A stretch of 64,000 bases of DNA from the NCBI GenBank assembly GCA_038087875.1, contig CM075992.1, positions 2,108,001-2,172,000 on the forward strand, given 5' to 3'. This document shows positions 7,338 through 44,529 of the stretch, piece by piece. Both the position numbers and the translations under genes were made by a program. The stretch is from Malacoraja senta. Taxonomy: Eukaryota. Each line of letters begins with the position of its first letter. Position 1 is the stretch's first letter. The notes beneath the pieces were generated by a model. That model was given only the letters and a program-made list of their open reading frames with translations, was not told the origin of the DNA and searched no databases.

Positions 7338-7413
7338 ATGCGTGGCACCATAAGGATAGTTTGTGAACTACTACTGACTGCGGTTCTGCTGAATCAACAC
7401 AGCAACCAGACAG
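7338..7413 (+). CDS. IL27RA: IL27RA-like coding exon 1 (signal peptide MRGTIRIVCELLLTAVLLNQHSNQT)
   Basis: Acceptor cag just upstream of ATG, hydrophobic core, phase-1 donor gtgata compatible with the next exon. Confidence 0.6.
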
Positions 7414-8866
7414 GTGATAATTATGACCCTTGCACCTTCAATCCCGGATCCCTGATCAAGAAATCCAACCCTAACAAGAGCGAAAATATCACCACATGTA
7501 TATTGAAGCAAATGGACTGTTTCATTATGTGGAGCATGGATATATCTTTAAAAGATGGTTGGAAGCTGTGAAAAGTGACAGGACTGGGTTAATGTCAGAG
7601 GATGGGATTCAGAATCAGCATAAAGTGAGGAAGGTGGTGAAAACAGTAACTGGGGGAACATAGTGGATGGGAATGAACTCAGTGCTAGGTAACAGAAGTG
7701 CAATTTAGAGTGTAGAGCCTCACAGGGCATTCAAAGCAACTGATAAATCTATGAAACCAGTTAAAAGAATTCTACAAATGGTTAATCACAAATGGATTGC
7801 AATATGAAAGACAAGAGGTTATAGCGATCCTATGCAAAACCTGTCTGCAGCCAGTTAGTGTACTGTGGATGGCATATACAGCAGGCTCTGAAATTTCAAC
7901 AAATTAATTGGAATGTTCTTATTCAAGAAAATAAGAGACTGATCAGGTGAGATATTTAAACATCGTGAAAGGATAGGATAAAAAAATTGATGGCGTTTTG
8001 GAAAATGCAGAGGATATTCTTAGGCTATACAATTGTTTTGATCAGCTGTTAAATTAGATCAACTGAATTTAATCCTGATAAATACAAAGTAATTCATTTG
8101 GGGAGATCATATAAGGGTAGGACATACAGAGTGAATGATAAGGTCTTAGCGAAGTATCAAGGAAGAGAGAGACCTTGGTGTCCAAGCCTAACGATCCATG
8201 AAAGTGGCAGAACAGGCAGACAGGGTGTTAAAGAATGCATATTGGATGTCAGTGCCACACATCCAATATGCACTCCACCAAGCTATCCTGAATTGGCATG
8301 GCAGGCATTCCCTGCTCTGGACTTTGATATTTGACTGAGGCTTGAAGCCTGATAAAGGATAGTATCTCGTATGCCAGACTCATGGAACATAGGAAAGGTC
8401 AGCTGTCCCAAGAGAACAGGAAGATGCTTAAGAATATCCAGAATAGCTAAGTAGATACAGTATAAACCGAAGATAGACACAAAAAGCTGGAGTAACTCAG
8501 CGGGACAGGCAGCGTCTCTGGAGAGAAGGAATGGGTGACGTTTCGGGTCCATTCCTTCTCTCCAGAGATGCTGCCTGTCCCACTGAGTTACTCCAGCTTT
8601 TTGTGTCTATCTTTGGTTTAAACCAGCATCTGAAGTTCCTTCTTACACATAGCTACAGTCTAAACATTTGCTCTAAATGTCCAGAGAAATGAGTTCAAAT
8701 CCACTGCAACAATTGGGAATTTAAATTCTGTTAATTAACCATGTTAACTGGGTTAGGAAACAAAGTCAGGATCGTATGTTAAATCAGACCCACAGGAATG
8801 CCAATCACAATGCCGCCCCATGAAAGTACTTTACCGCCACTGTTTCCTCATCTCTTTTATCCCCAG

Positions 8867-8978
8867 ACATGTTCTGCTTCAGAGTGGACAAGGACTCGGA
8901 GGTGATCTGTACTTGGAGCCCAATCCATAACACCTGGAAGACCACTGAGTACATGTTCCACTTGGAAATGAAGAGCAG
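8867..8978 (+). CDS. IL27RA: IL27RA-like exon 2 (DMFCFRVDKDSEVICTWSP...)
   Basis: C-x10-C-x-W cytokine-receptor motif; cag/gtgagt. Confidence 0.85.
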
Positions 8979-9392
8979 GTGAGTCTTGACTTCATATCAT
9001 AACTTACTGTGGAAGGGTAACTTGGGACACAAACAGTAACTCATCTTCCATCAGAGCTGTGTCTGTTCAGTTGTCAGAATATAATCCAGACTGATACTCC
9101 ACTGACGTACTGAGTTTAACAAGGAACTGCAGATGCTGGAAAATCCAAGGTAGACAAAAGTGCTGGAGAAACTCAGCAGGTGCAGCAGCATCTATGGAGC
9201 GAAAGGAAATAGGCAACGTTTCGGCCCGCTGGGTTTCCCGCACCCGCTGAGTTTCCTCAGCACTTTTGACTACCTACTGAGTTTAACAAGTCATTCTGAA
9301 ATTTGAAGGTCCTGTTGATTGAGACAGAGGACAGACACAAAATGCTGGAGTAACTCAGCGGGACAGGTAGCATCTCTGGAGAGAAGGAATGG

Positions 9393-9424
9393 GTGACGTT
9401 TCGGGTCGAGACCCTTCTTCAGAC
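9393..9424 (-). ncRNA. Minimal type I hammerhead ribozyme motif
   Basis: Reverse complement GU CUGAAGA A GGGU CUCG ACCC GAAA CG UC AC. Confidence 0.65.
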
Positions 9425-9918
9425 TTATTAAACAAAGGACCTGTCTTCAGAATCTGAAGTAGGGTCCCAATCTGAAATGTCATCTGCTCATTCCCTCCAC
9501 GGGTGTTGCCTGGCCCACTGAGTTCCCCCAGCAGTTTGTTCTTTGCTCAAGGATCCGTACCTGCAGTTCCTTGGCTTTCCCAGATGGGGAGAGTCAAGGA
9601 ACATCTGCTCTTTCAGATGGATGAGAAAGATCCCAACAAGTGGGTTGAGTTAACCTTGCATCCTTGAGCCAATATCTATCTCTCAAGGAATATCACCAAA
9701 TAGGTCATTAACCTAGAATGAAAACTAGACTGCAAAGTTAAATTAACAAACAGTCAAGGAATGTGTTTTTGAGTTAGGATTGATTCAGTCAGAGATTTTA
9801 AGATATTGAGGGGTACTGATCAGGAAGGCAGAGATACACTATTTTCATCTACCAAGTGGTTTATTACCATGGGGCAGGTTCCCAGCTTTCAAAAGTGAAG
9901 TATCAAGACTTAGAACTC

Positions 9919-10146
9919 AATAGACAATAGACAATATAGACAATAGACAATAGGTGCAGGAATAGGCCATTCGGCCCTTCGAGCCAGCACCGCCATTCAA
10001 TGGCTGATCATCCCCAATCAGTACCCCATTCCTGCCTTCTCCCCATATCCCCTGACTCTGCTATTTTTAAGAGCCCTATCTAGCTCTCTCTTGAAAGCAT
10101 CCAGAGAACCCGCCTCCACCGCCCTCTGAGGCAGAGAATTCCACAC
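9919..10146 (-). mobile_element. CR1-type LINE 3' end with (TAGACAA)n tail
   Basis: Reverse complement of the CR1 3'UTR seen elsewhere. Confidence 0.75.
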
Positions 10147-10194
10147 TCTTACCCTACCCCCAACCAATGTGGTGAAAGGTTCTTTTCAACCAGT

Positions 10195-10625
10195 GACTGG
10201 CTTATACTCGCTAGAATTTAGGAGATTGAGAGGGGATCTTATAGAAACGTACAAAATTCTTATGGGGTTGGACAGGCTAGATGCAGGAAGATTGTTCCCA
10301 ATGATGGGGAAGTCCAGGACAAGGGGTCACAGCTTAAGGATAAGGGGGAAATCCTTTAAGACCGAGATGAGGAAAAACTTTTTCACACAGAGAGTGGTGA
10401 ATCTCTGGAACTCTCTGCCACAGAGGGTAGTTGAGGCCAGTTCATTGGCTATATTTAAGAGGGAGTTAGATGTGGCCCTTGTGGCTAAGGGGATCAGGGG
10501 GTATGGAGAGAAGGCAGGTACGGGATACTGAGTTGGATGATCAGCCATGATCATATTGAATGGCGGTGCAGGCTCGAAGGGCCGAATGGCCTACTCCTGC
10601 ACCTATTTTCTATGTATCTATGTAT
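10195..10625 (+). mobile_element. CR1-type LINE 3' end
   Basis: GLYSLEFRRLRGDLIETYKIL...FFTQRVVNLWNSLP. Confidence 0.9.
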
Positions 10626-10833
10626 CCAGTTTCAAGGCCCAAGATGACCAGTGACTGGATGCAAGATCTAGTAGCTGTAATCAAGGACCAGGAACCAATG
10701 ACCAAGGATGACTAACATGAACTAGGACCTGTGGAGGGGATGCGACCAATGATAAAGGACGTGTGCTATTGGTGCTGAGGTAACTGCAAGGCTGTGGCGA
10801 TGACTGATGAGTTTCTCTTAGTTCCATCCACAG

Positions 10834-10976
10834 CAATAAGCCGCTTCGTATTCCGACCCTCTTGCCTTCGGTGACCCTAGAAAGGAAGATCCTCTCTGCG
10901 GGCAAGTGGTACGTTGCCTGGGTAGAAGTCAACAACACGCAGCTATCAAGTCTGGAATTCATCATCGAAGACATAG
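10834..10976 (+). CDS. IL27RA: IL27RA-like exon 3 (SNKPLRIPT...WYVAWVEV...IEDI)
   Basis: Open frame, phases 2/1; an in-frame alternative start at 10822 is possible. Confidence 0.75.
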
Positions 10977-11879
10977 GTACCAGTGATATTCCGAGGGTCA
11001 CGTTTTCATGCATTGTCGTGGATGTTTTCTAAAACTGAATAACAGGGAATTAATAACGTGCTTACATTCCTGTGGCATCCATTTCAGGAAAAGTATCTGA
11101 AGGGGAGTCCAAATGTGACAGTTTCAGTAAGGGAATTCCAGAGGTTTTTTTTCTTCTTTCCTTCTTTCTTTACATCTTTATTCACTCTTTGGCCACACTA
11201 CCTTGGTAGTCTAGGGCTTCTATCTTTGCACCTCTCACTTTTTATCTCTCTTGTTCTCTTTTCTTTTCCCTTATTTTCAAGTTAAAAAGTCACAATTGAA
11301 GCTGTACATTAATAACTGTATAATTTTATATGCCGATTGTTTTATTATTGTACAATTGCTTCTAATAAATAAATAAATGGACAACTAAATAAATGGATTC
11401 CAGAGTTTAGGACTTTGATACTTGAAGGTGTGGGGGCTGGGAGGGGGGGGGGAGATTAAATGCAGAGATGTTCAAGATACCATAGTGGAAGGGGGGGGGG
11501 TGGGGGGGTGCAGGCTCAGAGGATGTAGTAGAGAAAGGGAGGGTGGCCACGAGGAGTTTGAGTTGAAGTTTTAAGAAAGCCTTGCTTAACCAAGACCAGC
11601 ATCATTCAATTAAAGCAAGATAATGAACGAACAGGACTCAATTCAAGTAAGGACACGTGCCACAGAGTTTGGATTAAGCTAAAATTTAGAAAAAATATAA
11701 AATTGAAAGCTAGGTAGCTGGGAATGATCAGGTCTATCTAAAGATAATGACAACACAGATGACAAACAGATATGGCTGATAGACACATGAAGATTACATT
11801 CAGAAGTTGCTTTTACTCAGTACTGGTTCTTTCAGGGATTGCCAATTCTTTTTGATGGCGTGTTTTGTCATTGCTTTAG

Positions 11880-12031
11880 TGAAGCCCCAGCCTCCAGTTA
11901 ATGTGTACGCCAAAACCGATGGTCCCACGAATATAGCGATTGAATGGACGAAACCTGCCAACCTCGACCAATTCGTCAATATGCAGTATGAGCTTCAGTA
12001 CAGATTGGCAGGCCAGGAAAATTGGAATGAG
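11880..12031 (+). CDS. IL27RA: IL27RA-like exon 4 (VKPQPP...YELQYR..WNE)
   Basis: FNIII D2 N-half; tag/gtaggt. Confidence 0.9.
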
Positions 12032-12979
12032 GTAGGTTGGCCTCTGGCCTGTCACTCCAACATTTAATGGTAATAAGCCTTTGGCCAGTTCCCCTGGAGC
12101 TCCGGTTGGATGGAAAGGTCTGGCTAGATACATAGGGTGAGAGGGATGTTTCACTACTCAAGTTGTGGTTAGAGAGAGGCATTGTGATCTGGCTCGCAAG
12201 AGTGCATGGATCAGGGACCTGCGCTCACAAATGATGGATCGACATGTCTGATTTAGGGTCTCAGTTAAGTCAGATTAGCCTGAACTGCAGTCCACGTTCA
12301 GGGCTGGGCTGATCCAGGGTCATTGTTCATAAGCAGTTAGCAGAGGTGCTCCGATCAGAGTCCATGTCCAGGTGATGGGATCTCTTGACGCTGTGATCTG
12401 ATAGGGCCCTTGCTATATCCAGTTCTTCAAACACACTGATTTGCCATCCCTTCAAATCTGCAAATCCCCACCCAACAGCACTGTGGCAATACTTTCACCC
12501 CACATGCCGCAGCCACTCAGTAAAGAGGTTTGGCATCGCTTACTCAAGGAAAATTGGGGATTAGCAACAATTGTTGCCAAATGACCACAATCAATAAATA
12601 AATGAAAATAAATGTCAAGTTACTCATCTGATGCCTTATTCAACAGTGTCTGTCAGAAAAACTATCCCCTCCGCATCCCATTGAGAAAGAGCAATGCTGG
12701 TAAGTTCATGTCATATGAACAGAAGTAGGCCATTCGGCCCATCAAGTCTACTCCGCCATTCAATCATGGCTGATCTATCTTTCCCTCTCAACCCCATTCT
12801 CCTGCCTTGTCCCCATATCCCTTAACACTAATCAAGTATCTGTCAAGCTCCACCTTAAAACTACCCACAGCCGTCTGTGGCAATGATTTCCACAGATTGA
12901 CCACCAAGACAAACTATGAGGAGACTCTCACTTTCTGTGAAACCAGTAGTTAATCAATAGTTCTGTTTTTATTATGAAG

Positions 12980-13145
12980 GTTTCAGATGATGAAGTTGGA
13001 GTCCATGCAGTAGGCTACGTTCTGGAAGATCTACAACCATTCACACAGTATGAATTCCGTGTCCGATGTGGGCGAGAGGGAGAAACAAACCGGAAACTGT
13101 GGAGTGATTGGAGTGCAGTGACTGGTACCATGACCCAAGAAGCCA
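12980..13145 (+). CDS. IL27RA: IL27RA-like exon 5 (WSDWS motif)
   Basis: LQPFTQYEFRVRC...WSDWS; donor gtaagt. Confidence 0.9.
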
Positions 13146-13219
13146 GTAAGTGGAAACGTGTCCTTCAACGCAACATCATCCACAACCATCCTGATAATGA
13201 TGATTTACCAAACACTTAT

Positions 13220-13517
13220 GGGCGCAGGGTGGCGCAGCGGTAGAGCTGCTGCCTTACAGTGCCAGAGTCCCGGGTTCGATCCCGACTACGGGTGCTGTCT
13301 GTACGGTTTGTACGTTCTCCCCGTGACCTGCGCGGGTTTTCTCCGAGATCTTCGGATTCCTCCCACACTCTAAAGGCGTACAGGTTTTGTAGGTTAATTG
13401 GCTTGGTATTAATGTAAATTGTCCCTAGTGTGTAGGATAGTGTTGGGTCGCCGGTTGGTGCGGACTCGGTGGGCCAAAGGGCCAGCTTCTGCGCTGTATC
13501 GCTAAACTAAACTAAAC
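13220..13517 (+). mobile_element. tRNA-derived SINE (HE1/V-SINE-like)
   Basis: A box tggcgcagcgg, B box ggttcgatccc, (CTAAA)n tail. Confidence 0.8.
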
Positions 13518-13740
13518 CTACAATAATATGGATATATCTAACACCCATCATTGCAACACTCCAAGACATATATCTCGTATCCTTCACAGTAACGTCCTTC
13601 TATCCATAAATGCTGCCTGTCCCGCTGAGTTACTCCAGCATTTTGTGTAATCTTTGGTGTAAACCAGCATCTGCAGTTCCTTCCTACACTGCATAAGAGA
13701 TGTACCTCTCCTCTTATCTGTACACTCTTTTGATTCCTAG

Positions 13741-13808
13741 AACCTGTCGGTGTTCTCGATGTGTGGTTCATGCAAGGAGGACAAGGATCTATTACCCTGC
13801 TGTGGAAG
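13741..13808 (+). CDS. IL27RA: IL27RA-like exon 6 (PVGVLDVW...ITLLWK)
   Basis: gp130-family D4 start; phases 1/0. Confidence 0.85.
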
Positions 13809-13861
13809 GTACTGGGTAACATGCTTCAACATTCAGTTCTCCAACATCCAACATTCCTTCA

Positions 13862-13893
13862 GTCTGAAGAAGGGTTTCGGCCCGAAACGTTGC
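13862..13893 (+). ncRNA. Minimal type I hammerhead ribozyme motif (sense in IL27RA intron)
   Basis: GU CUGAAGA A GGGU UUCG GCCC GAAA CG UU GC. Confidence 0.65.
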
Positions 13894-14330
13894 CTATTTC
13901 CTTCGCTCCATTGATGCTGCTGCACCCGCTGAGTTTCTCCAGCATTTTTGTGTACGTTCGATTTTCCAGCATCTGCAGTTCCTTCTTTAACACATGCTCC
14001 AACATTCTCCTGCTAATTTCCCTGCAACCTGTTCTTCCTCACATGCACATCAACTTCATATTCAACTACATTAGAAGCAATTTACAGTCAGCAAATAGGA
14101 TGTGGGAGGAAGGTGAAGCTCCTGAGGAAAACTCACATGGGCACAGAGAGAATGTGTAAACTCCACAAGGTCAAGATCTGTGTCACACATTCTGTGAGGC
14201 AGACCACAGAGCCTCCCTGTGGGCTCATTTCTTCTCCAATCTGATGATTGAGAGTTCATTTCTTTTACATCAATACCGCAATTACCTTGAGTTTAATACT
14301 TGCTTCTACTATCAATGAGTCCTACTCTTT

Positions 14331-14858
14331 TTAGTTTAGAGATACAGCGCGGAAACAGGCCCTTCAGCCCACCGAGTCTGTGCTGACCGGTGATCCCTGC
14401 ACTATCCTACACACACTAGGGACAATTTTTACATTTACCAAGCCAATTTACCTCCATACCTGTACGTCTTTAGCGTGCGGGAGGAAACCAAAGATCTGGA
14501 ATAAACCCATGCGGCAACGTATAAACTCCGTGCATAGAAACATAGAAAATAGGTGCAGAAGGCGGCCATTTGACCCTCCGTGCCAGCACCGCCATCATTG
14601 TGATCATGGCTGATCATCCACAATCAGTAACCCTTCTCCCCATAATCCCTTGATTCCACTAGCCCCTAGATCTCTATCTAACTCTCTTTTAAATTCACCC
14701 AGTGAATTGGCCTCTACTGCCTTCTGTGGCAGAGAATTCCGCAAATTCACAACTCTCTGGGTGAAAACGTTTCACAGACGGCACCCGTGGGTTGGGATTG
14801 AACCCGGATCTCTGGCGCTGCAAGCGCTGTAAGGTAGCAACTCTACCACTGCGCCGCC
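14331..14858 (-). mobile_element. tRNA-derived SINE interrupted by a CR1 3' fragment (about 14535-14770)
   Basis: Reverse complement of the SINE head and tail on either side of a CR1 3'UTR. Confidence 0.7.
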
Positions 14859-15541
14859 CTTATTGACCTATCTATTTTTTAATGTACTTTTCTCTTCAGA
14901 AATTTCTCTACTTACCTTTGAACTGTAGACCTTCATTCTCACCATTTGGCGGGTGAATCTTGACGCTGTGATATGATTGAGCCCATGCTATGTCCAGTTC
15001 TTCAAACACACTGTTTCGTTATTCTACTTTATTCTATATTCTAATATATAGTCGACACTGCTTATTGTGGGGATTGTATGTTGTTGCTCCTGCATTCTCT
15101 TGGTCTTTCTCAGCCCCTCGTTGATAACATTGGCCCATGATTCAACTTCTAATTCAAGCTTTGAATGTTCTTCCTACTGTGATTCCAACGCTTAATCTCA
15201 TTGCCTTTAACTATTGACCTCTCTCTGTTGGATCCTTCTTTGAGCCCTTCTCTCAATTATCATATATTGGTCCAACCTCCTTCACTCTTCCTTTGATGCT
15301 CCAAACCCTTGATGCAACATACTGTTCCTTTGTTCAATTTTAATCTGTGGAAATCAATGTTCTGTGCATTTCTCATTCATTCGTTATCTCTCAGGACCTA
15401 ACAACGGTGTAACCTCTCTTGTCCCTCAGCCTCTGCTCTTAAGTCTTTGGCTTTTAATTTTCAAATCCCGGTCAGCCTGTCAATGTTATGAATCTCTCCA
15501 TCAAAAGCAATCATTTTGTTTTGTGGTTTTGGGTTTTGCAG

Positions 15542-15743
15542 CCTCTTGAACAACATCAAGCAAGAGGAATAATTCAGCGATACTCTGTGAATTATACTCT
15601 CCAATGGGATGGAGAAGAAATGAGCACAGCGACGATCACCGCCTGCCGTAACATCACCCTTTCTGAGACCCCTCAACTTGTGAACGTCAGTGCATACAAC
15701 TCTGTTGGAGCCACAGACCCGGCCACACTCAATCTGGTTCAAG
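15542..15743 (+). CDS. IL27RA: IL27RA-like exon 7 (PLEQHQARGIIQRY...VSAYNSVG)
   Basis: FNIII motif; cag/gtaacc. Confidence 0.9.
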
Positions 15744-16752
15744 GTAACCCACACATCCAGCACTCACCCATTGGTCTTCCCACAGACAGATATTCCGGTG
15801 ACTACAAATAACACAACTCTGTTCATCTGTGCTTGCATATGTTTTTATTATTTATTCATTTTGTAGGATCTGGGCATCACAGACAAGGCCAGCATCATCC
15901 CTAAAAGCCCTTGATAAATGCTAGTGAGCCATCTTTTCAGCAGCATTTCTAGTGAAGATAATCAAATACTGCTGCTGGGTAAGGAATTTCTCAGACAACA
16001 AAGGAGAGACTATTTACAGGATATTTCCAATTCAGAATGCTATGCAATTCTGAATGGGATAGAAAACAAAAAAGAATAAATGCCAAGTCAGCCTTGTAGT
16101 GAGCACTTAAATCCCCAACGTAATGTACATTCCAAGCCTGGATACTTTCAGTATTTCTTCCTCACCTTGTTCAACGGCGAAGGAGCATGGTAGGAGGTTA
16201 TCATGAGATTTCTGTGGGTATATTTACCTGGATGCCTTCAAACATGATGAGTATTGAAAAAGAAGAGTACACTTGTGTACACCTATGCAAGTACAGAGCA
16301 TACATAACAAACATGGACATATCAAAAAGTGTATATGTACATATAAATATGAATTTCCACAGACTAGTGGAAATTAATGTGTCACTATATGCCTGACATC
16401 TCACCAAAGATGCGGGAAAATTTAGATTCTTAACTAATCTGTCTCCCATCCTTACCTGATCGGGTCAATATGTGATTCTAGATTCACAGCCACATGCCGT
16501 ATTCTGAAAGTGTCCTGTGAATTTACTAGTTAAAGGGGAGTTGGATTAAGGGAATACAGACTTGGCCTTGCCAAAGACACACACAATCTGGGTAAGAATA
16601 GAAGGAATAACCATTTAACTGCTTGGTTGACGTATCAGAGCATAGGCATTGGCATGGAACTAACTCAACTTTTCTTGTGAGAGCACTGGGTTGGGAGGAG
16701 AATTAAAAAAATAAACTGACTCTTTGTGTTTATTTTACATGTTATTCCTTAG

Positions 16753-16935
16753 ATCAGTTACCTGTGTTGAACATAACTGTTCTCAACTACAATGACCAGG
16801 TTCAAGTGTGCTGGGTGGCATCAGCCAAGAAAGTGCTTGGGTTTGTGGTGGAATGGATTAACATGAACTTGCCTGAAGATCCACCAGAATGGAAGAAAAT
16901 TCCAGCACTGGATGAATGCATGGATCTGAAACATG
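16753..16935 (+). CDS. IL27RA: IL27RA-like exon 8 (VCW...FVVEW...WKKIP)
   Basis: gp130-family D5; tag/gtaggt. Confidence 0.9.
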
Positions 16936-18381: not shown

Positions 18382-18483
18382 ATGTTCTTCAGGCCCGGAT
18401 TCCATACAAAGTCTCCGTGTACACTCAATATCAGATTGGTCTGGGTAGGCCAGTTTCTACCCTCATCTACACAAAAGAAGGAG
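18382..18483 (+). CDS. IL27RA: IL27RA-like exon 9 (DVLQARIPYKVSV...YTKEG)
   Basis: Open frame, phases 1/1. Confidence 0.9.
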
Positions 18484-18844
18484 GTAATATAATATAATGT
18501 GCCTATTATTGTGCGTTAATAGTGGGTCTGATTGAGTAAGATCTTCAGACCAGTCTGAAGAAGGGTCTCGCCCAGAAACATCGCCCATCCCTTCTCTCCA
18601 GAGATGCTGCCTGTCCCGCTGAGTTACTCCAGCTTTTTGTGTCTATCTTTGGTTTAAACCAGCATCTGCAGTTCCTTCCTACATAAGATCTTTTAATCAT
18701 TACGTCTACAATATGACCAAAGAAAACTGAACATGGTGGGACTTAACAAATAGAAGACTTATCATTTAAATTAATAGAAGGCCTTAAGATTACAAAGGGA
18801 TTGAATAATGTAAATGTAGAGACCATGTCTTCTCATTTGTGGGA

Positions 18845-19262
18845 TAAGTAAGTAAGTAAATAAGTTTATTGGCCAAGTATTCACATACAAGTATTCCGCC
18901 CACAAGTAACAACATGACATACAGTGACAGTTACAAATGACTCAGAAAACACTAAACATTAATAATAATAAAACATTAATGATAAAACACCATTGATCAA
19001 GCATGTGAACCAACAAAATACCTGATCAAAGGGAGGCTACAGATTTTTGGCTGTTGAGTAGAGCAACTACTCGTGGATAAAAACTGTTTTTATGTCTGGC
19101 TGTGGCAGCTTTGACAATCCGCAGCCCCCTTCCAGAGGGAAGTGATTCAAAGAGTTTGTGGCCAGGGTGAGAGGGGGTCAGAGATGATCTTGCCCGCTCG
19201 CTTCCTGGCCCTTGCAGTGTACAGTTCATCAATGGAGGGAAGGTTGCAGCCAATAACCTTTG
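18845..19262 (-). mobile_element. Rex1/Babar-like LINE 3' end
   Basis: SHPGHKLFESLPSGR...ARHKNSFYP; a shorter copy lies at about 23642-23790. Confidence 0.7.
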
Positions 19263-19576
19263 GCTGAAGCAAAAGATGCTCACAAATAAATCCATTAAAC
19301 AATTCAGAAACTTCTCTATTTGAGGTTGGAGTTTGCTGCAGTCTCCTGCCTCGGTACCGGGTCGATCTAGCTTCCTGTAACTACTCCATTTTTTTTTAAA
19401 TGCAATGATGGAGAAGGCCCTTTATCTTTGATTGGGAAATAGGTGACAGCATATTATTTAACACTGGCTGGTGCCTGCCTCTCCACCCTGGGTTGTAGTG
19501 TGTACGTTTGAAACATTCAGCTGAAAAATATGATCTTTATAGTTCTCAGGACTTCCTCTTTCTTTTTGTTTTGCAG

Positions 19577-19732
19577 TGCCTCTCACAGGACCCCAGGTCT
19601 CAATATATAACATTTCTCAGACTTCAGCCACACTGTTATGGAAGAATGTTCCTTTGAGCCTCCGCCAAGGGTTTATTCTTTACTACACTCTGATTTACGT
19701 AAAGAATCCACCGGAAGGCAGCAGGCAGAAAG
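19577..19732 (+). CDS. IL27RA: IL27RA-like exon 10 (PLTGP...VPLSLRQGFILYYTL)
   Basis: gp130-family D6; cag/gtaaga. Confidence 0.9.
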
Positions 19733-20608
19733 GTAAGAGGAATAATCCAGGATCACAAACAGATTGTGCTTCCATTGGCAGGGTCCTTATCCAATTCTGA
19801 ACCAACAGCAGATGTCTTGTAGCCCCTGATAATCACTGTCCTAGGCTTAGCAAATCTTTGTCCTGGTTCCTGAGTGACTGGGTATCCTTTCTGGATACCA
19901 GAGAAGCTCATAATCAATGAGTTTAATCTTTCCTACCCGTCCACTCATCACACCTCGCCATATTACCATGATGACGGCAAAAGGGATTTACCCATTGTTC
20001 AATCAGGGCAGCAATGCTATTCCATGCGTCTCCAACAATCCAGTTGCATATACATAGACTGGAGATTGCTGGAGGGATTCACCCTGCATTGGGCCGAATT
20101 GTTAAACCTTTTCCTGCATCCTTAAATTTGACACGGTTTTGTCCTGTAACTGTTGGGAATATGACAGTGAGAACCTGTTTCCCAGTGTAGAAATGTCCAA
20201 CACTAGAGGACGTAGCTGTAAGGAGTGGGGGAAAGTTTAATGGAGATCCGCGTAAATATTTTTTTACGCAGAGTAGTGGGGGCTTTGGAACGCATTGCCA
20301 GGGGTGGTGGTGGTGTAGGCAGATACGATAGTGGCGCTTAAGAAGCTTTTAGATAGGCACAGGAAAGTGTAGAGAGTAGAAGGATATGGATCATCTACTG
20401 GCAGATGAGATCAGTTTAACTTGGCATCATGTTCGGCACCAACATTGTGGGCTAAAGGGCTTCCTGTGCTGTGTTATGACCTGAGGACATTGGTGAACAG
20501 TTGATTGATGTTACAGTGCTAATCAATGAATAGGTAAGGACATGGGAGGGTGAGAGACTGGGTGAATTCAATGTCCCTAAAGTTAAAAATATGTTTTCGT
20601 TCTCTTAG

Positions 20609-20746
20609 TTCTCAATATAAGCTCTGCATTAAATAACTTCACATTATTGAACTTGGAGCCTGCGAACACCTACAGGATCTGGATGACAGCTTCCACTCGC
20701 ATAGGAACAGGCATGAGCGGACCACACCTCAACCTGAAGACAGGAG
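20609..20746 (+). CDS. IL27RA: IL27RA-like exon 11 (LEPANTYRIWMTASTRIGTG)
   Basis: FNIII C-half; phases 1/1. Confidence 0.9.
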
Positions 20747-21550
20747 GTAATGTTGGAAAGCGGGTGTTTGGGAAGAAATTTCCTTTGGATTTCATTCTCT
20801 AAAATGAGGAGCAGTTGAGGCCCTCCCGATATCAAGACACACTACAGCGAGACCTCAAATGGCTAATATGGAGACCTAGTGACAGAGAGCAATCCCAGCG
20901 ACCCAGTACTATCAAGGGGCAGACTTGCATGACAATAATATGCAGGGGAGGCCTAATTAGCCACCCATGGCCCAACAGCCGATGGCCTTAAAATAAACTA
21001 GATACGAGATACTACAGGATAAAAATGGGTTTACGAGTCCCTGACATATGGACATCCTTCCATACAAACAGGGCCCCGTAATATTATAAAATTCAAAAGA
21101 ATTTAACTTTTTCATAATATCATCATCAAAAGGTAAAGGAATTGGGCAAGGCTATTGGTTCACAAATTTATGACAAGGTACAGTAATTACCCAATTCCCT
21201 CATGAAACATTGGCCAGACAAACAATAATTTTGAAGTGTTTTGATGTCAGCCTTGGATAAAAATGACCCCCCCCCCCCTTGGTTTTCCTCCTCTTCTAGA
21301 TTTTCATATTCTTAAGTTAGAGGTGTTATGCCAAAGCCAGCATGAAGGATCCACCTTGAAGAGCTCTTGCCTCCCATTTACCACAAGCTTATATACCCTA
21401 TTTCAAGAGGCTGGTAAATGCTCTGTGCTTCCATATCCTCAGGCCATATCCTCAACCCATCATCAATATCCTAAATGATCTATCCTTAAGATAATAACAT
21501 GATTGTGACCGTTCTTTTCTGCTTTAACATTACTTCTCTGCTGCCTTTAG

Positions 21551-21647
21551 CTTCACATATTATATCCTGGAAGCATATTATCCTGGTACTCGTGATCTTG
21601 GTTGTTATTGTTCTTAGCATCACTGGAATATGCTGCTTTCCTCAAAG
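21551..21647 (+). CDS. IL27RA: IL27RA-like exon 12 (transmembrane WKHIILVLVILVVIVLSITGICCF)
   Basis: Hydrophobic helix; tag/gtgagt. Confidence 0.9.
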
Positions 21648-23029
21648 GTGAGTCGCTCTCCTCCAAACACATAGACATGTATCGGAGAGATTAACAATGA
21701 GTTGCTCAGAGTGCATCCAGGTGTGTTTGTGCTAGTGGAGTTTTGTACATTTGAGTCTGCACGTGTCAGGCAACACAACCCTTTTGCATATCACGTGTCA
21801 GTGGGTGACAGTGGGCATTTGAGTGTAATGGCCCAATGTTTACAGATACTAAAAAAAACATAAAGTGCTGGAGTAACTCAGCGGGTCGGGCAACGTCTCT
21901 GGAGTTCATGGATAGGTGACATTTTGGGTCGGGACTGAAGAAGGCTCCCGAACTGAAACATCACCTATCCATGTTCTCCAGAAATGCTGCCTGACCCACT
22001 GAGTTACTCCAGCACTTTGTGTATTTTTTTTACAAACCAGCATGTACAGTTCCATGTTCCTACATTCACAGATGCTAGACACTATGTGGTATTCCAGATG
22101 ATAATGGGATCTTGAGAAAATATAATTAGAATATCATTAAATACAGGTAAGGAGGGACAATTTGCAACTCACATCAAGATGATGAAAGTATGATATGGAG
22201 AGTGTTTGTGATTGGAGCAAGGGATGGGGGAAAGAGGCAGGAGGAGGGGGTGGGTTCGTAGAAAGAGTGATATGGTAATGCAGGGCGGTGAATAGGGAGG
22301 TTGTGGGCGAAAATGTGGGAATTTTGAAAGGAAGGGAAGAAATAGGGGCTGAGAATGAGGGGTAACTGGAAGGTGGTGAAGAAGAGGGCATCTTGAGGAA
22401 GGATATGAGAACGCTGGCAAAAGATATGCATATGGGCATGTCCGTGCGCATATCTGTGTCGATAGAGCACAACTGGGTAAAATATGAAAAGACATTTGTA
22501 TTTATGTCCAGATATGAGTGTGTGTGAAATACAGGCAACAATGGCCACTGTCCATTTGTCGTGAATCTCATTAAAATTGGAGCAAGAACTTGGACCAATT
22601 CTGTGAACCTCATGTACTAGCTGGTTTGCAATGGTCATCCTATATGACAAGAGTTCATGCACAGGCATCTTCTACTCTGGTCCACCTAGATCCTGAGGAA
22701 CTGCCTAACAGTCAGATTCACGACCTGCTCATAAACACTGCTGCATCCTTTATTCACATGACAGACACAAAATGCTGGAGTAACTCAGCGGGACAGGCAG
22801 CATCTCTGGAGCGAAGGAATGGGTGACGCTTCAAGTCGAGACCCTTCTTCAGACTCTTCATTTATTGCCCATCCACAGGTTTTGCTTGAGAAGGAAGCAG
22901 TGAACTATTACAGTTCTTCTTTTGAACGTTGTCCCAGAATATTATTGCGTTGGCAGTTCAAGAATTTGGACCCAGCAATGAAAGAATGATGAGATATCTC
23001 CTAACACATTTCTGTCATGAGCTTGGAGT

Positions 23030-23352
23030 TTTTAGTTTAGTTCGGGGTTAAGCTTTAGAGATATAGAGCGGAAACAGGCTCTTCGGCCAATCAAGTCCGC
23101 ACAGACCTGCGATCCCCACACACTAACTCTATCCTACACAGACTGAGGACAATTTACAATGATACCACGCCAATCAACCTACAAACCTGCATGTCTTTGG
23201 AGTGCAGGAGGAAAACGGAGATCCTGAAGGAAACCCATGCAGGTCACGGGAAGAACATACAAATCTGCACAAACAGCACCCATAGTCAGGATCAAACCCG
23301 GGTCTCTGATGCTGTACAGCAGCAACTCCACCAATGCGACACCGTGCCACCC
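23030..23352 (-). mobile_element. tRNA-derived SINE (HE1-like)
   Basis: Reverse-complement similarity to 13220-13517. Confidence 0.75.
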
Positions 23353-24156
23353 ATGAGGAGGAGGATCCTTGATTGAAGATCCTTCATAAGTAACTGCTGT
23401 CCATTTTGCAAATCGTACACAATGTAGCCTTAATGCATTGATGCTGGAGAGCATAATGTTCATGCTGGTGGATGGAGCATCATGCAAAAGTGAGAAAAGA
23501 ATATAACCATATGATGATAGACCAAGACATATGCTGGAAAATGGATTACATGGCGTAGAATGTCAATATGAATCAATCCAGCTGAATGATCCAATTCAAA
23601 ACTCTGCTGTCCATAAAAGCTAACAAAGCAATGCCTAGTGCATGAATGAATGAATGAATAAGTTTATTGGCCAAGTATTCACATACAAGGAATTTGCCTT
23701 GGTGCTCCACCCGCAAGTGACAACATGACATACAGTGACATTTAGGAATGGCACATAAAACATTAAACATTAATAATAAAACATTAGCGATTACTTGCAC
23801 CGGTAATTGGTTGACTTTAAAATCCTCAACCATGTTATCAAATCAATTGTGGTGTCATCATTCTCTCATGTAACCTTCACCAGTTTTATAGCCATCTGGG
23901 ATCTCTGCATTCCTTCAGTAAAATAAATTGGATTATTTCATCTGGCGGGTAAGGCGAGGTAGGCTGGAACAAAGTGGCATATGCAAATACTGTAAATGTC
24001 AGGAAACACATTGTTGCAGAGGGTGGAAATCCAGCACTTCCTCCACAAAATATGAGCAACACCAAGATGAATGAAAATTTCAAGCAGAGGTTGGTAGATA
24101 TTAATATGTGTATGTGTGTGTGTGTGAGAGTGCGTGCCTGCATATATATATATATA

Positions 24157-25772
24157 CAGTGGCTTGCAAAGGTTTTCATACCGCTTGAACTTTTCCACAT
24201 TTTGTCACGTTACAACCACAAACGTAAATGTATTTTATTGGGATTTTATGTGATAGACCAACACAAAGTGGTGCATAATTGTGAAGTGGAAGGAAAATGA
24301 TACGTGGTTTTCAAATTTTTTTACAAATAAAAAACTGAAAAGTGTGGCGTGCAAAAGTATTCAGCCCCCCTGAGTCAATACTTTGTAGAACCACCTTTCG
24401 CTGCAATTACAGCTGCAAGTCTTTTGGGGTATGTCTCTACCAGCTTTGCACATCTAGAGTGAAATTTTTGCCCATTCTTCTTTGCAAAATAGCTCAAGCT
24501 CAGTCAGATTGGATGGAGAGAGTCTGTGAACAGCAATTTTCAAGTCTTGCCAGAGATTCTCAATTGGATTTAGGTCTGGACTTTGACTGGGCCATTCTAA
24601 CACATGAATATGCTTTGATCTAAACCATTCCATTGTAGCTCTGGCTGTATGTTTAGGGTTGTTGTCCTGCTGGAAGGTGAACCTCCGCCCCAGTCTCAAG
24701 TCTTTTGCAGGCTCTAACAGGTTTTCTTCCAAGATTGCCCTGTATTTGGCTCCATCCATCTTCCCATCAACTCTGACCAGCTTCCCTGTCCCTGCTGAAG
24801 AAAAGCATCCCCACAGCATGATGCTGCCACCACCATGTTTCACAGTGGGGATGGTGTGTTCAGGGTGATGTGCAGTGTTAGGTTTCCGCCACACATAGCG
24901 TTTTGCATTTAGGCCAAAAACTTCAATTTTGGTCTCATCTGACCAGAGCACCTTCCTCCACATGTTTGCTGTGTCCCCCACATGGCTTGTGGCAAACTGC
25001 AAACGGGACTTCTTATGGCTTTTTTTCAACAATGGCTTTCTTCTTGCCACTCTTCCATAAAGGCCCGATTTGTGGAGTGCACGACTAATAGTTGTCCTGT
25101 GGACAGATTCTCCCACCTGAGCTGTGGATCTCTGCAACTCCTCCAGAGTTACCATGGGCCTCTTGGCTGCTTCTCTGATCAATACTCTCCTTGCCCGGCC
25201 TGTCAGTTTAGGTGGACGGCCATGTCTTGGTAGGTTTGCAGTTGTGCCATACTCTTTCCATTTTCGGATGATGGATTGAACAGTGCTCCGTGAGATGTTC
25301 AAAGCTTGGGATATTTTTTAATAACCTAACCCTGCTTTAAACTTCTCCACAACTTTATCCCTGACCTGTCTGGTGTGTTCCTTGGGCTTCATGATGCTGT
25401 TTGTTCACTAATGTTCTCTAACAAACCTCTGAGGCCTTCACAGAACAGCTGTATTTATACTGAGATTAGATTACACACAAGTGGACTCTATTTACTAATT
25501 AGGTGACTTCTGAAGGCAATTGGTTGCACTGGATTTTATTTAGGGGTATCAGAGTAAAGGGGGCTGAATACTTTTGCACGCCACACTTTTCAGTTTTTTA
25601 TTTGTAAAAAAATTTGAAAACCATGTATCATTTTCCTTCCACTTCACAATTATGCGCCACTTTTGTGTTGGTCTATCACATAAAATCCCAATAAAATACA
25701 TTTACGTTTGTGGTTGTAACGTGACAAAATGTGGAAAAGTTCAAGGGGTATGAATACTTTTGCAAGCCACTA
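24157..25772 (-). mobile_element. Tc1/mariner IR/DR transposon, Passport-like, full length
   Basis: About 213 bp TIRs starting CAGTGGCTTGCAAA with internal direct repeats, set in a (TA)n tract. Confidence 0.95.
24375..25392 (-). pseudogene. Tc1 DD34E transposase (339 aa if repaired)
   Basis: MKPKEHTRQVRDKVVEKFKAGLGY*KIS...; WSDETK, QQD-x34-E; TAA at 25320-25318 and a 2-bp loss near 24460. Confidence 0.92.
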
Positions 25773-25780
25773 TATATATA

Positions 25781-25822
<42 letters not shown>
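25773..25822. repeat. (TA)n microsatellite
   Basis: Direct reading. Confidence 0.9.
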
Positions 25823-25828
<6 letters not shown>

Positions 25829-25920
25829 AAACTATAGACATATAGATATTTTATCAGATCAACTGGGGCTACATGACCTCCTCTTGTTCTGATGCTGCTA
25901 ATCGGCTGTTTGTTTTTCAG

Positions 25921-26008
25921 GATAAAACGCCTTGTCTCCATGTTAGTACCTCAGTGGTGCTGCCAGAGAATCCCAGATCCTAAAATCATCCGTGATCTGC
26001 TCCAGCAG
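25921..26008 (+). CDS. IL27RA: IL27RA-like exon 13 (box1 PQWCCQRIPDP)
   Basis: Box1 motif; cag/gtgaga. Confidence 0.9.
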
Positions 26009-26784
26009 GTGAGAACTTCAATATGTATTAATCAGGTTTTCCATGACGGTTTAGGGAGAACCTGCAATGAAGAATGTTGACGTGTGATACTTGTGGTCCT
26101 TCTTTAAAACTTTACTCTTCAGAAAGCTGTGGATTGACTTTTAACGGTTTGTTAACTGTATTTTGACTGTGACATTTCACTTTAATTGTTCCCAACCCTA
26201 GAATTGTAATTAAAAAATATTCTCATTCAATGCCCACCTTAATTTCTGTCTGGGTTCATCTGCTGCTGCAGAACTTGCATAGACACCACAGCAGCACAGC
26301 ATTTAGTGCTACTGCTTCACAGCAGAAACCTACAGGCCCAAGTTTTATCCTGACCTGGGTGGAGTTTGCACATTCTCCCAGTGACAATGTGGGTTTCCTC
26401 TGAGTGTTCGTTTTTCTCACATCCGAAAGTCATGAAGGATGATTGATTGAAATGGCCATTGTAAATTGCCCCGAGTGTGTTAGTAAATAGTAGAATTTGG
26501 GACAGAAGGAATGAGAATGTGAAGAGATTAAAAAGGGACTAATGTTGGATTCATGTAGATGGGTGGCTGATGGTCAGAGTGGACTTTGTGGGATGAAGAG
26601 CCTGCTTTTGTGCTACACCTCACTATGACTCTCATCGTTTGCCTTTGTCACCTCTAGCCTATTTTAACAAATAACGTGCTGGTCTTCTATCTTTTGCCAT
26701 CTGTAAAAAAGGTTGAACTAATGGTAATGATATAATCTCCATGGTATACCACAAACCTTAGCATCATTCTGCATATATTTTCAG

Positions 26785-27207
26785 AATCATACCACTCCTA
26801 AACATTTTACTATGATTAAGAGTGATCCAGAAATCATTAAAGTGGAAGAGGTTATACCCGAGATCATGATGCAAGTACCTCTGGAAAACAGCAAGAGCTC
26901 AAATGCTGAAGAAATGTTTTGGCCCAACAGCCCCACACTGACAGACGCCAAGAGCTCAAATGCTGAAGATCTGTTTTGGCCAAGCACGCCAACCCGGGAG
27001 GTAGACAACTCTCCACAGGTCACCATTCATTCACATAAAGAATTTGCACTAGAGCCAATCAGCACAGAATTACCAGGAGCAGGAAGAACCTGCAATACCT
27101 CAGGCTATGAGAAACACTTCATACCATCGCAAGAACAACTGCTTGAAGATGAATGGCAATTAAACAATAAAGCGCAATGGCTAGGATTGGTGGAATCCCA
27201 ACAATGA
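26785..27207 (+). CDS. IL27RA: IL27RA-like exon 14 (box2-like IIKVEE, SGYEKHF, stop)
   Basis: In frame with exon 13; GYEKHF motif. Confidence 0.88.
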   Translation, partial: NHTTPKHFTMIKSDPEIIKVEEVIPEIMMQVPLENSKSSNAEEMFWPNSPTLTDAKSSNAEDLFWPSTPTREVDNSPQVTIHSHKEFALEPISTELPGAGRTCNTSGYEKHFIPSQEQLLEDEWQLNNKAQWLGLVESQQ

Positions 27208-33858: not shown

Positions 33859-34095
<237 letters not shown>

Positions 34096-35182
34096 TGAAT
34101 CTGTCCAACAGTTCACTTGTCTAAACCCAACCATACTCTGGCCACTTGGTTTGTGTCTCTGGTCCATCAGCTGTCAGTTTATTCTACAATGTTGGAGTGA
34201 ATTTTATGGATTAGTGTGTGATTGTTCTTTTCGGCTGTGTTTTGTGTAGTCTTTGGTTTACCAGATTGTTACATATGCGTGGAGAAAAGAATGTCCATGT
34301 ATAAAAATGCGGGTTTATTCAGTGCTCCAAGGAATAGAGACCCAGCCTACTCGACCTCACCCTATAATCCAGACCCTCTAGTTCTGGCAACATTCTCGTA
34401 AATCTTCTCTGTACCTGTTCCCAGTCCAACCTGGCCAGGACCTACACAGTGAACAATAGTGGTCTGAGTAGTATTGTAGAACAGAGAGATCGAGGAATGC
34501 AGGTGGAGTCGCAGGTAGATCGGGTGGTCAAAAAGGCTTTTGGCACATTGGCCTTCATCAGTCAGAGTATAGAAGTTGGGAGGTCATGATGCAGTTGTGT
34601 AAGACGTTGGTGAGGCCGCATTCAGAGTATTGTGTTCAGTTCTGAGCACCGTGTTACAGAGTTTGAGTAGGAACAAGTTATTGTGAACAGTTATGTTAGT
34701 GGGAATGGTTGGCAAACTCTGGATTTCTATGTTGACAAAGATTGCATTTTGAAATCATTCACCTTGGGCCAATTTCCAATTAGAATGTTTTCTAAATGGT
34801 AATACCAGGAACTGTGGGGAGAATTGTATTTGGGTCGGTGGCTACAAATGAATAAAAGTTATTGCAATTGGAACGCCAAATGAGGAATTTCTGATTGTAT
34901 CAGATTTTGTTCATCCACCATCTGACTATTGTCTTGAACTCTGCCTCTGAGGTGATGGTATAAAATGTGTTTGAAGATAATCATAAATTTGTTTTAAGAT
35001 TTGTTTAATTTCTGTTGGATATATAGTTAAACGGTGTTTCATTTTGATTAAATGCATTCAACTCCGGGGAATAAAGAAGCATTTTTAAATTCAGTAAAAT
35101 TATTCTAGAGTGAAGTGATGGGACAGTTGTCATCTCTAGAAACATAGGATTCCCTTCCCAAAAGACTGGTGATTTTAGGTAG

Positions 35183-35368
<186 letters not shown>

Positions 35369-37234: not shown

Positions 37235-37540
<306 letters not shown>

Positions 37541-44500: not shown

Positions 44501-44529
44501 TCGGGCACCATGCTGAGCTATGAATCTGA

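What the first reader, a model, noticed from the sequence alone, without database searches (positions are those of the whole stretch)
7338..27207. Intact IL27RA (WSX-1) orthologue candidate in a cartilaginous fish
Seen: complete 14-exon ORF with the signal peptide spliced directly to the cytokine-binding domain (no Ig), C-x10-C-x-W-x-P, no second Cys pair in D1, WK before the TM, box1 PQWCCQRIPDP, IIKVEE, and only one cytoplasmic Tyr, in SGYEKHFIPSQEQL. From recall, human IL27RA has C-x10-C-S-W-E-P, PRWVWEKVPDP, ILEVEE and SGYEKHFLPTPEEL (STAT docking site). It keeps canonical WSDWS where human has WGEWS. Automated pipelines may label it gp130-, IL12RB- or IL31RA-like. Inference: IL-27 receptor signalling dates to the jawed-vertebrate ancestor.
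Basis: partly seen in the sequence, partly recalled or inferred. Interest (0 to 1): 0.7.

Follow-up and report, generated by a model that had tools for sequence, protein, structure and literature searches.

The report
Skate IL-27 receptor alpha gene

Summary
A 14-exon, 705-residue open reading frame lies on the + strand at 7338-27207, and every intron is GT-AG. It encodes a signal peptide joined directly to a cytokine-binding module, with no Ig domain. It also has WSDWS, three further FN3 domains, a membrane span, a box-1 motif, and one cytoplasmic tyrosine in SGYEKHFIPSQEQL.

The IL27RA reading is supported by four lines of evidence:
- Three non-human mammalian IL27RA proteins carry the recalled motifs, including SGYEKHFLPTPEEL.
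- Trees place the skate and shark proteins with mammalian IL27RA and ray-finned-fish "il12rb2-like" proteins. Support is 85/90 on the ectodomain alone and 90/92 with the tail. IL12RB2 is the sister group.
- Mammalian IL27RA finds the shark and ray proteins as its best non-mammalian matches.
- A transportin gene (TNPO2 by recall) follows the receptor in this skate, in another skate and in tarpon.

The weak points are that a test of the IL12RB2-sister alternative does not reject it (p 0.08-0.10), and that no IL12RB1, IL23R or CSF3R sequences could be obtained.

It is not new. Redmond et al. 2018 reported IL-27Ralpha and p28 orthologues in cartilaginous fishes, and NCBI names the great white shark copy "IL-27 receptor alpha-like". 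The scan had not reported this gene before.

The parts
7338..7413 (+). Exon 1: start codon and signal peptide (aa 1-26)
   Evidence: GT donor at 7414
8867..8978 (+). Exon 2: first half of CHR domain D1, with C29-x10-C40-T-W-S-P at 8875-8922
10822..10976 (+). Exon 3: second half of D1 (no second Cys pair)
11880..12031 (+). Exon 4: first half of CHR domain D2
12980..13145 (+). Exon 5: second half of D2, with WSDWS at 13100-13114
13741..13808 (+). Exon 6: first part of FN3 domain D3
15542..15743 (+). Exon 7: rest of D3
16753..16935 (+). Exon 8: first half of FN3 domain D4
18382..18483 (+). Exon 9: second half of D4
19577..19732 (+). Exon 10: first half of FN3 domain D5 (donor GTAAGA at 19733)
20609..20746 (+). 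Exon 11: second half of D5
21551..21647 (+). Exon 12: WK and the membrane span (aa 513-533 at 21577-21639)
25921..26008 (+). Exon 13: box-1 JAK-binding motif PQWCCQRIPDP at 25949-25981
26785..27207 (+). Exon 14: cytoplasmic tail and stop codon. It holds IIKVEE (26833-26850), a two-copy KSSNAE..FWP..PT repeat (26887-26997) and the single Tyr in SGYEKHFIPSQEQL (27100-27141).
33964..51761 (+). Neighbouring gene downstream on the same strand: a transportin (TNPO2 by recall), running on beyond these exons. It is used here as synteny evidence.
   Evidence: the same gene follows the receptor in tarpon (L001) and in Rhinoraja (L003)

Best explanation
The window, from a skate (family Rajidae), holds the intact orthologue of IL27RA (WSX-1/TCCR), the ligand-specific chain of the interleukin-27 receptor.

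Shown here:
- The gene is complete and spliceable.
- It encodes a type I membrane protein with a two-domain cytokine-binding module, three membrane-proximal FN3 domains, a box-1 motif and one C-terminal tyrosine motif.
- That motif is the same as in mammalian IL27RA and in the ray-finned-fish proteins named 'il12rb2-like'.
- The protein groups with these in trees.

Inferred from what is known of mammalian IL-27R:
- The D1-D2 module binds IL-27 (p28 plus EBI3) together with gp130.
- Box 1 holds a JAK.
- Phosphorylated Y673 in GYEKHF recruits STAT1, as Y613 does in the human receptor. The chain would then give the STAT1-biased output that sets IL-27 apart from IL-6.
For: Gene model: 14 exons, all GT-AG, one stop, 705 aa. 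It is 87-91% identical to three other skates' proteins.

Constraint: dN/dS against Rhinoraja is 0.25 in D1-D2 and 0.30 in the last 45 residues, against 0.59 overall.

C-terminal motif: SGYEKHF[ILM]P[ST] is present in the tail of all 14 shark and ray orthologue records and 2 fragments. It is also in 6 ray-finned-fish proteins and 4 mammalian IL27RA sequences. It is absent from the IL12RB2, IL6ST, IL31RA, LIFR and LEPR rows and from the other outgroup proteins retrieved.

Trees: on ectodomain columns only, sharks and rays + mammalian IL27RA + ray-finned fish form one clade at 85/90 (UFboot/SH-aLRT), sister to IL12RB2. With the membrane span and tail columns added, support is 90/92, and 98/95 for the join with IL12RB2.

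Reverse searches: mammalian IL27RA, whole or ectodomain alone, scores shark and ray proteins at 77-179 bits. Its top hits (127-179 bits) exceed the best IL12RB2 hit (86-138 bits) in every search.

Pfam: family PF28570 (IL27RA_FN3_3) is recorded without a weak mark for the Rhinoraja and Scyliorhinus orthologues, as for opossum IL27RA.

No Ig domain: skate residue 25 aligns to gp130 residue 130. There is no Ig-like exon in 1-11000.

Synteny: the receptor is followed by a transportin on the same strand here, in Rhinoraja and in tarpon.

Literature: IL27Ralpha and p28 orthologues exist in cartilaginous fishes (PMC6238376). Human Y613 is needed for STAT1 activation (PMC8099432). Box 1 is needed for JAK-dependent signalling (PMC4582978).
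Against: - By plain similarity the skate protein scores higher against IL12RB2 and gp130 than against mammalian IL27RA. Human IL27RA reaches only about 30 bits over the CHR.
- Support for the IL27RA clade is moderate. The AU test does not reject a shark/ray + IL12RB2 clade (p 0.098 and 0.076).
- The tree has only three IL27RA sequences, all mammalian. It has no IL23R, IL12RB1, CSF3R or shark IL12RB2.
- Mammalian IL27RA is not next to TNPO2; it lies between an insulin-family gene and a paralemmin gene.
- No transcript, ligand-binding or signalling data were available.
Confidence: 0.88

Rival explanations
1. It is a fish lineage of IL12RB2-like receptors, sister to IL12RB2/IL23R rather than to IL27RA, as the NCBI names suggest. 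Its resemblance to IL27RA in the tail would then be retained ancestral sequence or convergence.
For: NCBI names the orthologues IL-12R beta-2-like. The best match outside sharks and rays is gharial IL12RB2, at 204 bits for P0001 and 181 bits for the window's ectodomain. The AU test does not reject shark/ray + IL12RB2. Ray-finned-fish members keep an N-terminal stretch that aligns to the end of the IL12RB2 Ig domain.
Against: The ML trees put it with IL27RA even without the tail columns. No retrieved IL12RB2 has the GYEKHF tail. It has no Ig domain and only one cytoplasmic Tyr. It sits next to a transportin gene, not next to IL23R. Reverse searches from mammalian IL27RA prefer it over IL12RB2. 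Published trees find separate IL27Ralpha and IL-12Rbeta2 orthologues in cartilaginous fishes.
Confidence: 0.07
2. It belongs to another Ig-less or gp130-side branch: IL12RB1, IL31RA, or the fish-only gp130-like gene (IL6RBL).
For: IL12RB1 and IL31RA also lack an Ig domain (from general knowledge). Leucoraja's copy is named gp130-like. gp130 gives the highest PDB score. No IL12RB1 sequence was available for the tree.
Against: In all trees gp130, IL31RA and the Chiloscyllium gp130-like protein form a separate clade, starred in the careful trees. No IL12RB1 chain appears among the 60 best PDB matches listed in each of two searches, whereas IL12RB2, IL23R, IL27RA, IL31RA and gp130 do. There are no YxxQ motifs; the only cytoplasmic Tyr is in YEKH. 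Published trees place IL12RB1 in a different major clade from IL27RA/IL12RB2/IL23R.
Confidence: 0.03
3. It is an IL27RA-derived gene that no longer works: a young pseudogene or a decaying copy.
For: dN/dS in D3-D5 (0.58) and in most of the tail (0.94) is high. The tail carries a variable tandem repeat. No expression data were seen.
Against: There are no stops or frameshifts, and all 26 splice sites are canonical. The same intact gene is present across skates, rays and sharks. The ligand-binding module and the docking motif are constrained (dN/dS 0.25 and 0.30).
Confidence: 0.02

Closest known systems
Mammalian IL27RA (WSX-1/TCCR), e.g. P0070 Gracilinanus and P0074 Muntiacus; human structures 7U7N and 8D85
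   Same: Both have no Ig domain and a CHR plus three FN3 domains. Both have one Cys pair in D1 with C-x10-C-x-W-x-P, and WK before the membrane span. Box 1 has the form P-x-W-x4-IPDP. An acidic (I/L)-x-V-E-E stretch is present. The C-terminal SGYEKHF-x-P-x2-E-x-L tyrosine motif is shared. Both have the Pfam IL27RA_FN3_3 hit.
   Different: Overall identity is only about 28-30%. Mammals are on a long branch. WSDWS is canonical here but is WGEWS or WSEWS in some mammals. The human protein has a second cytoplasmic Tyr, Y543. The neighbours differ: an insulin-family gene and a paralemmin gene in opossum, a transportin here. The skate tail is about 60 residues longer and contains a repeat.
Cartilaginous-fish IL27Ralpha orthologues of Redmond et al. 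2018 (PMC6238376), and NCBI models in sharks and rays (P0001, P0009-P0022, P0067)
   Same: They are the same gene. Identity is 87-91% in skates, 70% in sawfish and 48% in catshark. Motifs and architecture are the same.
   Different: This is another skate species. The public names are inconsistent: gp130-like, IL-12Rbeta2-like, and IL-27Ralpha-like in only one case.
Ray-finned-fish 'interleukin 12 receptor, beta 2a, like' (il12rb2l), e.g. P0025 Megalops and P0026 Acipenser
   Same: They have the same C-terminal GYEKHF motif and box-1 form. They fall in the same clade. In tarpon the same transportin gene lies immediately downstream on the same strand.
   Different: They have about 90-100 extra N-terminal residues that align to the end of the Ig domain of IL12RB2. 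Identity is 30-33%.
IL12RB2
   Same: It is the sister family. It has a similar box 1 (PQWYSKAIPDP) and a canonical WSDWS. It gives the highest sequence score among bony-vertebrate proteins.
   Different: IL12RB2 has an N-terminal Ig domain (Lep_receptor_Ig). It has a longer tail without GYEKHF. It lies next to IL23R (PMC12162339).

Membership tests
IL27RA (IL-27 receptor alpha) | Class I cytokine receptor module: two FN3-like domains, a conserved Cys pair with C-x10-C-x-W, and WSXWS | tested here: met
   C29-x10-C40-TWSP and WSDWS at residue 206. fn3 Pfam hits on orthologue P0001. The whole CHR aligns to human IL27RA 7u7n_A residues 5-192 and to gp130.
IL27RA (IL-27 receptor alpha) | No N-terminal Ig domain; the ectodomain is a CHR plus three FN3 domains | tested here: met
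   The signal-peptide exon joins directly to D1. Residue 25 of the Leucoraja orthologue P0001 (89% identical) aligns to gp130 residue 130. No Ig-like exon lies in 1-11000. Caveat: ray-finned-fish orthologues have extra N-terminal sequence.
IL27RA (IL-27 receptor alpha) | Third FN3 domain matches Pfam PF28570 (IL27RA_FN3_3) | tested here: inconclusive
   Precomputed hits without a weak mark exist for the Rhinoraja orthologue (87% identical) and for Scyliorhinus, as for opossum IL27RA. The local Pfam copy lacks this model, so the window's own protein could not be scored. One monotreme IL12RB2 also carries the hit.
IL27RA (IL-27 receptor alpha) | Box-1 JAK-binding motif after the membrane span | tested here: met
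   PQWCCQRIPDP at aa 546-556 aligns with LPHWVWEKIPDP of mammalian IL27RA. The function of box 1 is taken from PMC4582978.
IL27RA (IL-27 receptor alpha) | C-terminal STAT1-docking tyrosine (human Y613) in GYEKHF | tested here: met
   Y673 in SGYEKHFIPSQEQL is the only cytoplasmic Tyr. The motif is found in mammalian IL27RA and not in other families retrieved. The role of Y613 is from PMC8099432. That Y613 is the GYEKHF tyrosine rests on my recall of the human sequence.
IL27RA (IL-27 receptor alpha) | Groups with tetrapod IL27RA in a phylogeny of the gp130/IL-12R group | tested here: met
   The clade has support 85/90 (ectodomain only) and 90/92. It is moderate: AU p is 0.098 and 0.076 for the IL12RB2-sister alternative. 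IL12RB1, IL23R and CSF3R were not sampled. The published tree gives BPP 1.00 and UB 97%.
IL27RA (IL-27 receptor alpha) | Conserved genomic neighbourhood | tested here: inconclusive
   Transportin follows the receptor in two skates and in tarpon. Sturgeon has a GADD45GIP1-type gene beside it. Opossum IL27RA has other neighbours. That human TNPO2, GADD45GIP1 and IL27RA all lie in 19p13.1 is from recall only.
IL27RA (IL-27 receptor alpha) | Binds IL-27 (p28/EBI3) and signals with gp130 | not testable with these tools
   Papers report p28, EBI3 and gp130 genes in cartilaginous fishes. There are no binding data.
IL12RB2 | N-terminal Ig-like domain ahead of the CHR | tested here: not met
   Lep_receptor_Ig is found in IL12RB2 rows but not in the skate orthologue. 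No Ig exon was found.
IL12RB2 | Groups with tetrapod IL12RB2 | tested here: inconclusive
   The ML trees place it outside IL12RB2, but the AU test does not reject a sister position.
gp130 (IL6ST) and gp130-like | Ig domain, second Cys pair in the first CHR domain, YxxQ STAT3 motifs | tested here: not met
   There is no Ig domain, a single Cys pair in D1 and no YxxQ. It sits in a separate clade, starred in the careful trees.
IL12RB1 | Groups with IL12RB1 | not tested
The only evidence is indirect: no IL12RB1 chain appears among the 60 PDB matches listed in each, and published trees put IL12RB1 in another major clade.

The most novel reading that the evidence does not exclude
The Ig-less build that is taken as a hallmark of IL27RA may not be ancestral. 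Ray-finned-fish orthologues (same tail motif, same transportin neighbour) keep about 90-100 N-terminal residues that align to the end of the IL12RB2 Ig domain. The domain would then have been lost independently in cartilaginous fishes and in the tetrapod line. Alternatively, the ray-finned-fish gene is a separate old duplicate, which the weak (shark/ray + mammal) grouping would fit.
Probability: 0.35. Interest if true: 0.3.

Novelty: already known. Interest (0 to 1): 0.15.

Why it matters
It adds a clean, fully resolved gene model of IL27RA for one more skate. It shows that the STAT1-docking tail motif and the box-1 form are unchanged from sharks to mammals. This fits the published view that the IL-27 / gp130 / STAT1 axis was already present in the jawed-vertebrate ancestor.

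The practical value is for curation. Most public shark, ray and ray-finned-fish copies carry misleading names (IL-12Rbeta2-like, gp130-like, il12rb2l). Surveys that go by gene name will therefore undercount IL27RA outside tetrapods.

Tried and rejected
- Single exons searched against solved structures gave gp130 as the best match for the WSDWS exon, and nothing useful for the frame I first took for D3. The D3 guess was wrong; its first half lies at 13741-13808.
- I spent the one exhaustive protein search on the tail exon. It found only the skate orthologue and one shark fragment. A full-length query would have served better.
- A search restricted to the tail of P0001 found only rays.
- The full-length word-indexed search missed every tetrapod IL27RA. 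A profile of the C-terminal halves was needed to reach them.
- The local Pfam copy lacks PF28570, so the window protein could not be scored against it.
- Exact-sequence look-ups failed for P0044 and P0001.
- My first dN/dS run was invalid for exon 14 because of repeat indels, and was redone.
- Searching papers for the motif letters returned only chance hits. A search for il12rb2l found gene lists only.
- I did not predict a structure. All members of this receptor group share the fold, so it would not separate the candidates.


Full report
**What is there**

The window is vertebrate DNA with no N runs. Open frames on the + strand between 7.3 and 27.2 kb carry pieces of a class I cytokine receptor. 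The tail exon, searched against 1.84 billion representative proteins, found a 708-residue protein (P0001) at 85% identity and a 225-residue shark fragment (P0002). Six weak matches came after these.

Mapping P0001 back onto the window and refining each junction gave 14 exons. All have AG acceptors and GT donors. The CDS is 2118 nt with a single terminal stop and encodes 705 residues.

The protein has these parts:
- a signal peptide (exon 1) joined directly to D1;
- C29-x10-C40-T-W-S-P and no second Cys pair in D1;
- WSDWS at residue 206;
- three more FN3 domains;
- W510-K511 and a membrane span at 513-533;
- box 1, PQWCCQRIPDP, at 546-556;
- IIKVEE at 582-587;
- one cytoplasmic tyrosine, Y673, in SGYEKHFIPSQEQL.

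**Whose genome**

The model is 90.6% identical to the Amblyraja radiata protein, 88.8% to Leucoraja erinacea and 87.1% to Rhinoraja longicauda. It is 70% identical to sawfish and 48% to catshark. The window therefore comes from a skate that is not one of those three species. Earlier notes of this scan on the same genome also call it a skate.

**Is it IL27RA?**

*Names and forward similarity.* NCBI calls the Leucoraja protein 'IL-6 receptor subunit beta-like' and about ten shark and ray orthologues 'IL-12 receptor subunit beta-2-like'. Only a Carcharodon fragment is 'IL-27 receptor subunit alpha-like'. It also reflects a real asymmetry. In forward searches the skate protein scores higher against IL12RB2 and gp130 than against mammalian IL27RA. 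The word-indexed search returned no tetrapod IL27RA at all.

*Motifs.* A profile of the C-terminal halves of the shark, ray and ray-finned-fish proteins retrieved opossum, muntjac and a third mammalian IL27RA. The GYEKHF tail occurs in all shark and ray orthologues and in six ray-finned-fish proteins named 'il12rb2a-like' or misnamed. It occurs in none of the IL12RB2, IL6ST, IL31RA, LIFR or LEPR sequences retrieved.

*Trees.* A 41-row maximum-likelihood tree on ectodomain columns only leaves the tail motif out. It unites sharks and rays, mammalian IL27RA and the ray-finned-fish proteins at 85/90 (UFboot/SH-aLRT). IL12RB2 is the sister group at 87/95, and gp130, IL31RA and a gp130-like shark protein fall in a separate starred clade. 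With the membrane span and tail columns added, the values are 90/92 and 98/95. A quick tree agrees.

*Reverse searches.* Mammalian IL27RA, whole or ectodomain alone, finds shark and ray proteins as its best non-mammalian matches. Its top hits score 127-179 bits, above the best IL12RB2 hit at 86-138 bits. The long mammalian branch (about 1.6-1.8 substitutions per site) explains the asymmetry.

*Pfam.* Family IL27RA_FN3_3 is on record, without a weak mark, for the Rhinoraja and catshark orthologues and for opossum IL27RA. The local Pfam copy lacks that model.

**Weak points**

- The AU test does not reject a tree in which the shark and ray clade is held with IL12RB2 (p 0.098 on the ectodomain, 0.076 with the tail).
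- Only three IL27RA sequences, all mammalian, were available.
- For IL12RB1 there is only indirect evidence. No IL12RB1 chain is among the 60 PDB matches listed in each of two searches, while IL12RB2, IL23R, IL27RA, IL31RA and gp130 are. Published trees put IL12RB1 in a different major clade.

**Surroundings**

Downstream on the same strand, from 33964, lies a transportin gene. One exon is 70/75 identical to human transportin-1. It differs from transportin-1 at three positions where, from my recall, TNPO2 differs.

The same arrangement occurs in other species:
- In tarpon, the 'il12rb2a-like' gene is followed 3.9 kb downstream, on the same strand, by a transportin gene whose first coding exon is 94% identical to the skate's.
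- In Rhinoraja, the orthologue is followed by a transportin in the same way.
- In sturgeon, a GADD45GIP1-type gene lies beside the orthologue.
- In opossum, IL27RA lies between an insulin-family gene and a paralemmin gene. From recall, this is the RLN3-IL27RA-PALM3 order of human 19p13.12, about 1.3 Mb from TNPO2.

Gene order therefore ties the skate gene firmly to the ray-finned-fish genes. It ties it to mammals only at the level of the chromosome block.

**Constraint**

Against the Rhinoraja coding sequence, taken from locus L003, dS is 0.11. dN/dS is:
- 0.59 overall;
- 0.25 in D1-D2;
- 0.58 in D3-D5;
- 0.94 in the tail as a whole;
- 0.30 in the last 45 residues, which hold the tyrosine motif.

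The counts are small, but the pattern fits a working immune receptor. The ligand-binding module and the docking site are held; the rest drifts.

**How it most likely works**

Shown here: the anatomy above. Inferred from mammalian IL-27R: the CHR binds IL-27 (p28/EBI3) and pairs with gp130; box 1 holds a JAK (PMC4582978); and the phosphorylated tyrosine of GYEKHF recruits STAT1. In the human receptor, mutation of Y613 removes 80% of STAT1 activation but little of STAT3 activation (PMC8099432). By my recall of the human C-terminus, Y613 is the GYEKHF tyrosine. The skate chain has that tyrosine and no other, so it is a minimal form of the same design. Papers report p28, EBI3 and three gp130 genes in cartilaginous fishes.

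**Novelty**

Redmond et al. 2018 state that direct orthologues of IL27Ralpha (BPP 1.00, UB 97%) and of IL-27 p28 exist in cartilaginous fishes. A 2025 survey lists a Callorhinchus IL27RA homologue. A 2025 study of the receptor paralogon dates IL27RA to the jawed-vertebrate duplication.

The finding is a correct gene call in one more species, and the evolutionary inference is already in print. What remains of modest interest:
- the misleading public names;
- the exact conservation of the docking motif;
- the extra N-terminal sequence of the ray-finned-fish orthologues, which aligns to the end of the IL12RB2 Ig domain. The Ig-less build may therefore have arisen more than once.

No earlier report of this scan covers this gene.

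Noticed in passing
window 24457-25317, minus strand (intron 12 of the receptor gene): An uninterrupted 287-codon frame of a Tc1/mariner-type transposase: HTH_Tnp_Tc3_2 at 88 bits, DDE_3 at 53 bits, and part of a Sleeping Beauty-type HTH.
   Followed up: partly
window 26887-26997 (exon 14, cytoplasmic tail): A tandem repeat of about 19 residues (KSSNAE-x-x-FWP-x-x-PT...). There are two copies here and in Leucoraja, and three or four in Amblyraja and Rhinoraja. Tail length therefore varies among skates.
   Followed up: partly
window 28000-32000, with a 30-bp repeat at 28977-29147: A G+C-rich, G-skewed island (up to 57% GC) between the receptor and the transportin gene. It holds 5.7 copies of a 30-bp G-rich unit at 97% match. 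It is probably the transportin promoter region.
   Followed up: no
window 33964 to beyond 51761, + strand: A transportin gene (TNPO2 by recall) with many exons. The same gene follows the receptor in tarpon (L001 from 24620) and in Rhinoraja (L003 from 41364).
   Followed up: partly
P0025 residues 1-135, P0026 residues 1-120 (ray-finned-fish orthologues); L001, L002: The ray-finned-fish orthologues have about 90-100 extra N-terminal residues. Their end aligns to the last strand of the IL12RB2 Ig domain (C-x3-C ... G-x-PP-x-x-P). Pfam gives no significant hit, and the skate window has no such exon.
   Followed up: partly
window 10130-10528 (+, intron 2); also 2623-2862, 1055-1276 and other copies: Repeated open frames with the same peptide (…RGDLIETYKI…SRTRGHSLRI…FFTQRVVNLWNSLPQ…). 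They look like the 3' end of an abundant retroelement ORF scattered through the introns and flanks.
   Followed up: no
P0069 (Nibea albiflora), P0001 (Leucoraja), P0009-P0022: The public names of this orthogroup are inconsistent. One teleost copy is labelled 'leukemia inhibitory factor receptor, partial'. Skate, shark and ray copies are labelled gp130-like or IL-12Rbeta2-like. Only the Carcharodon fragment P0067 is labelled IL-27Ralpha-like.
   Followed up: yes
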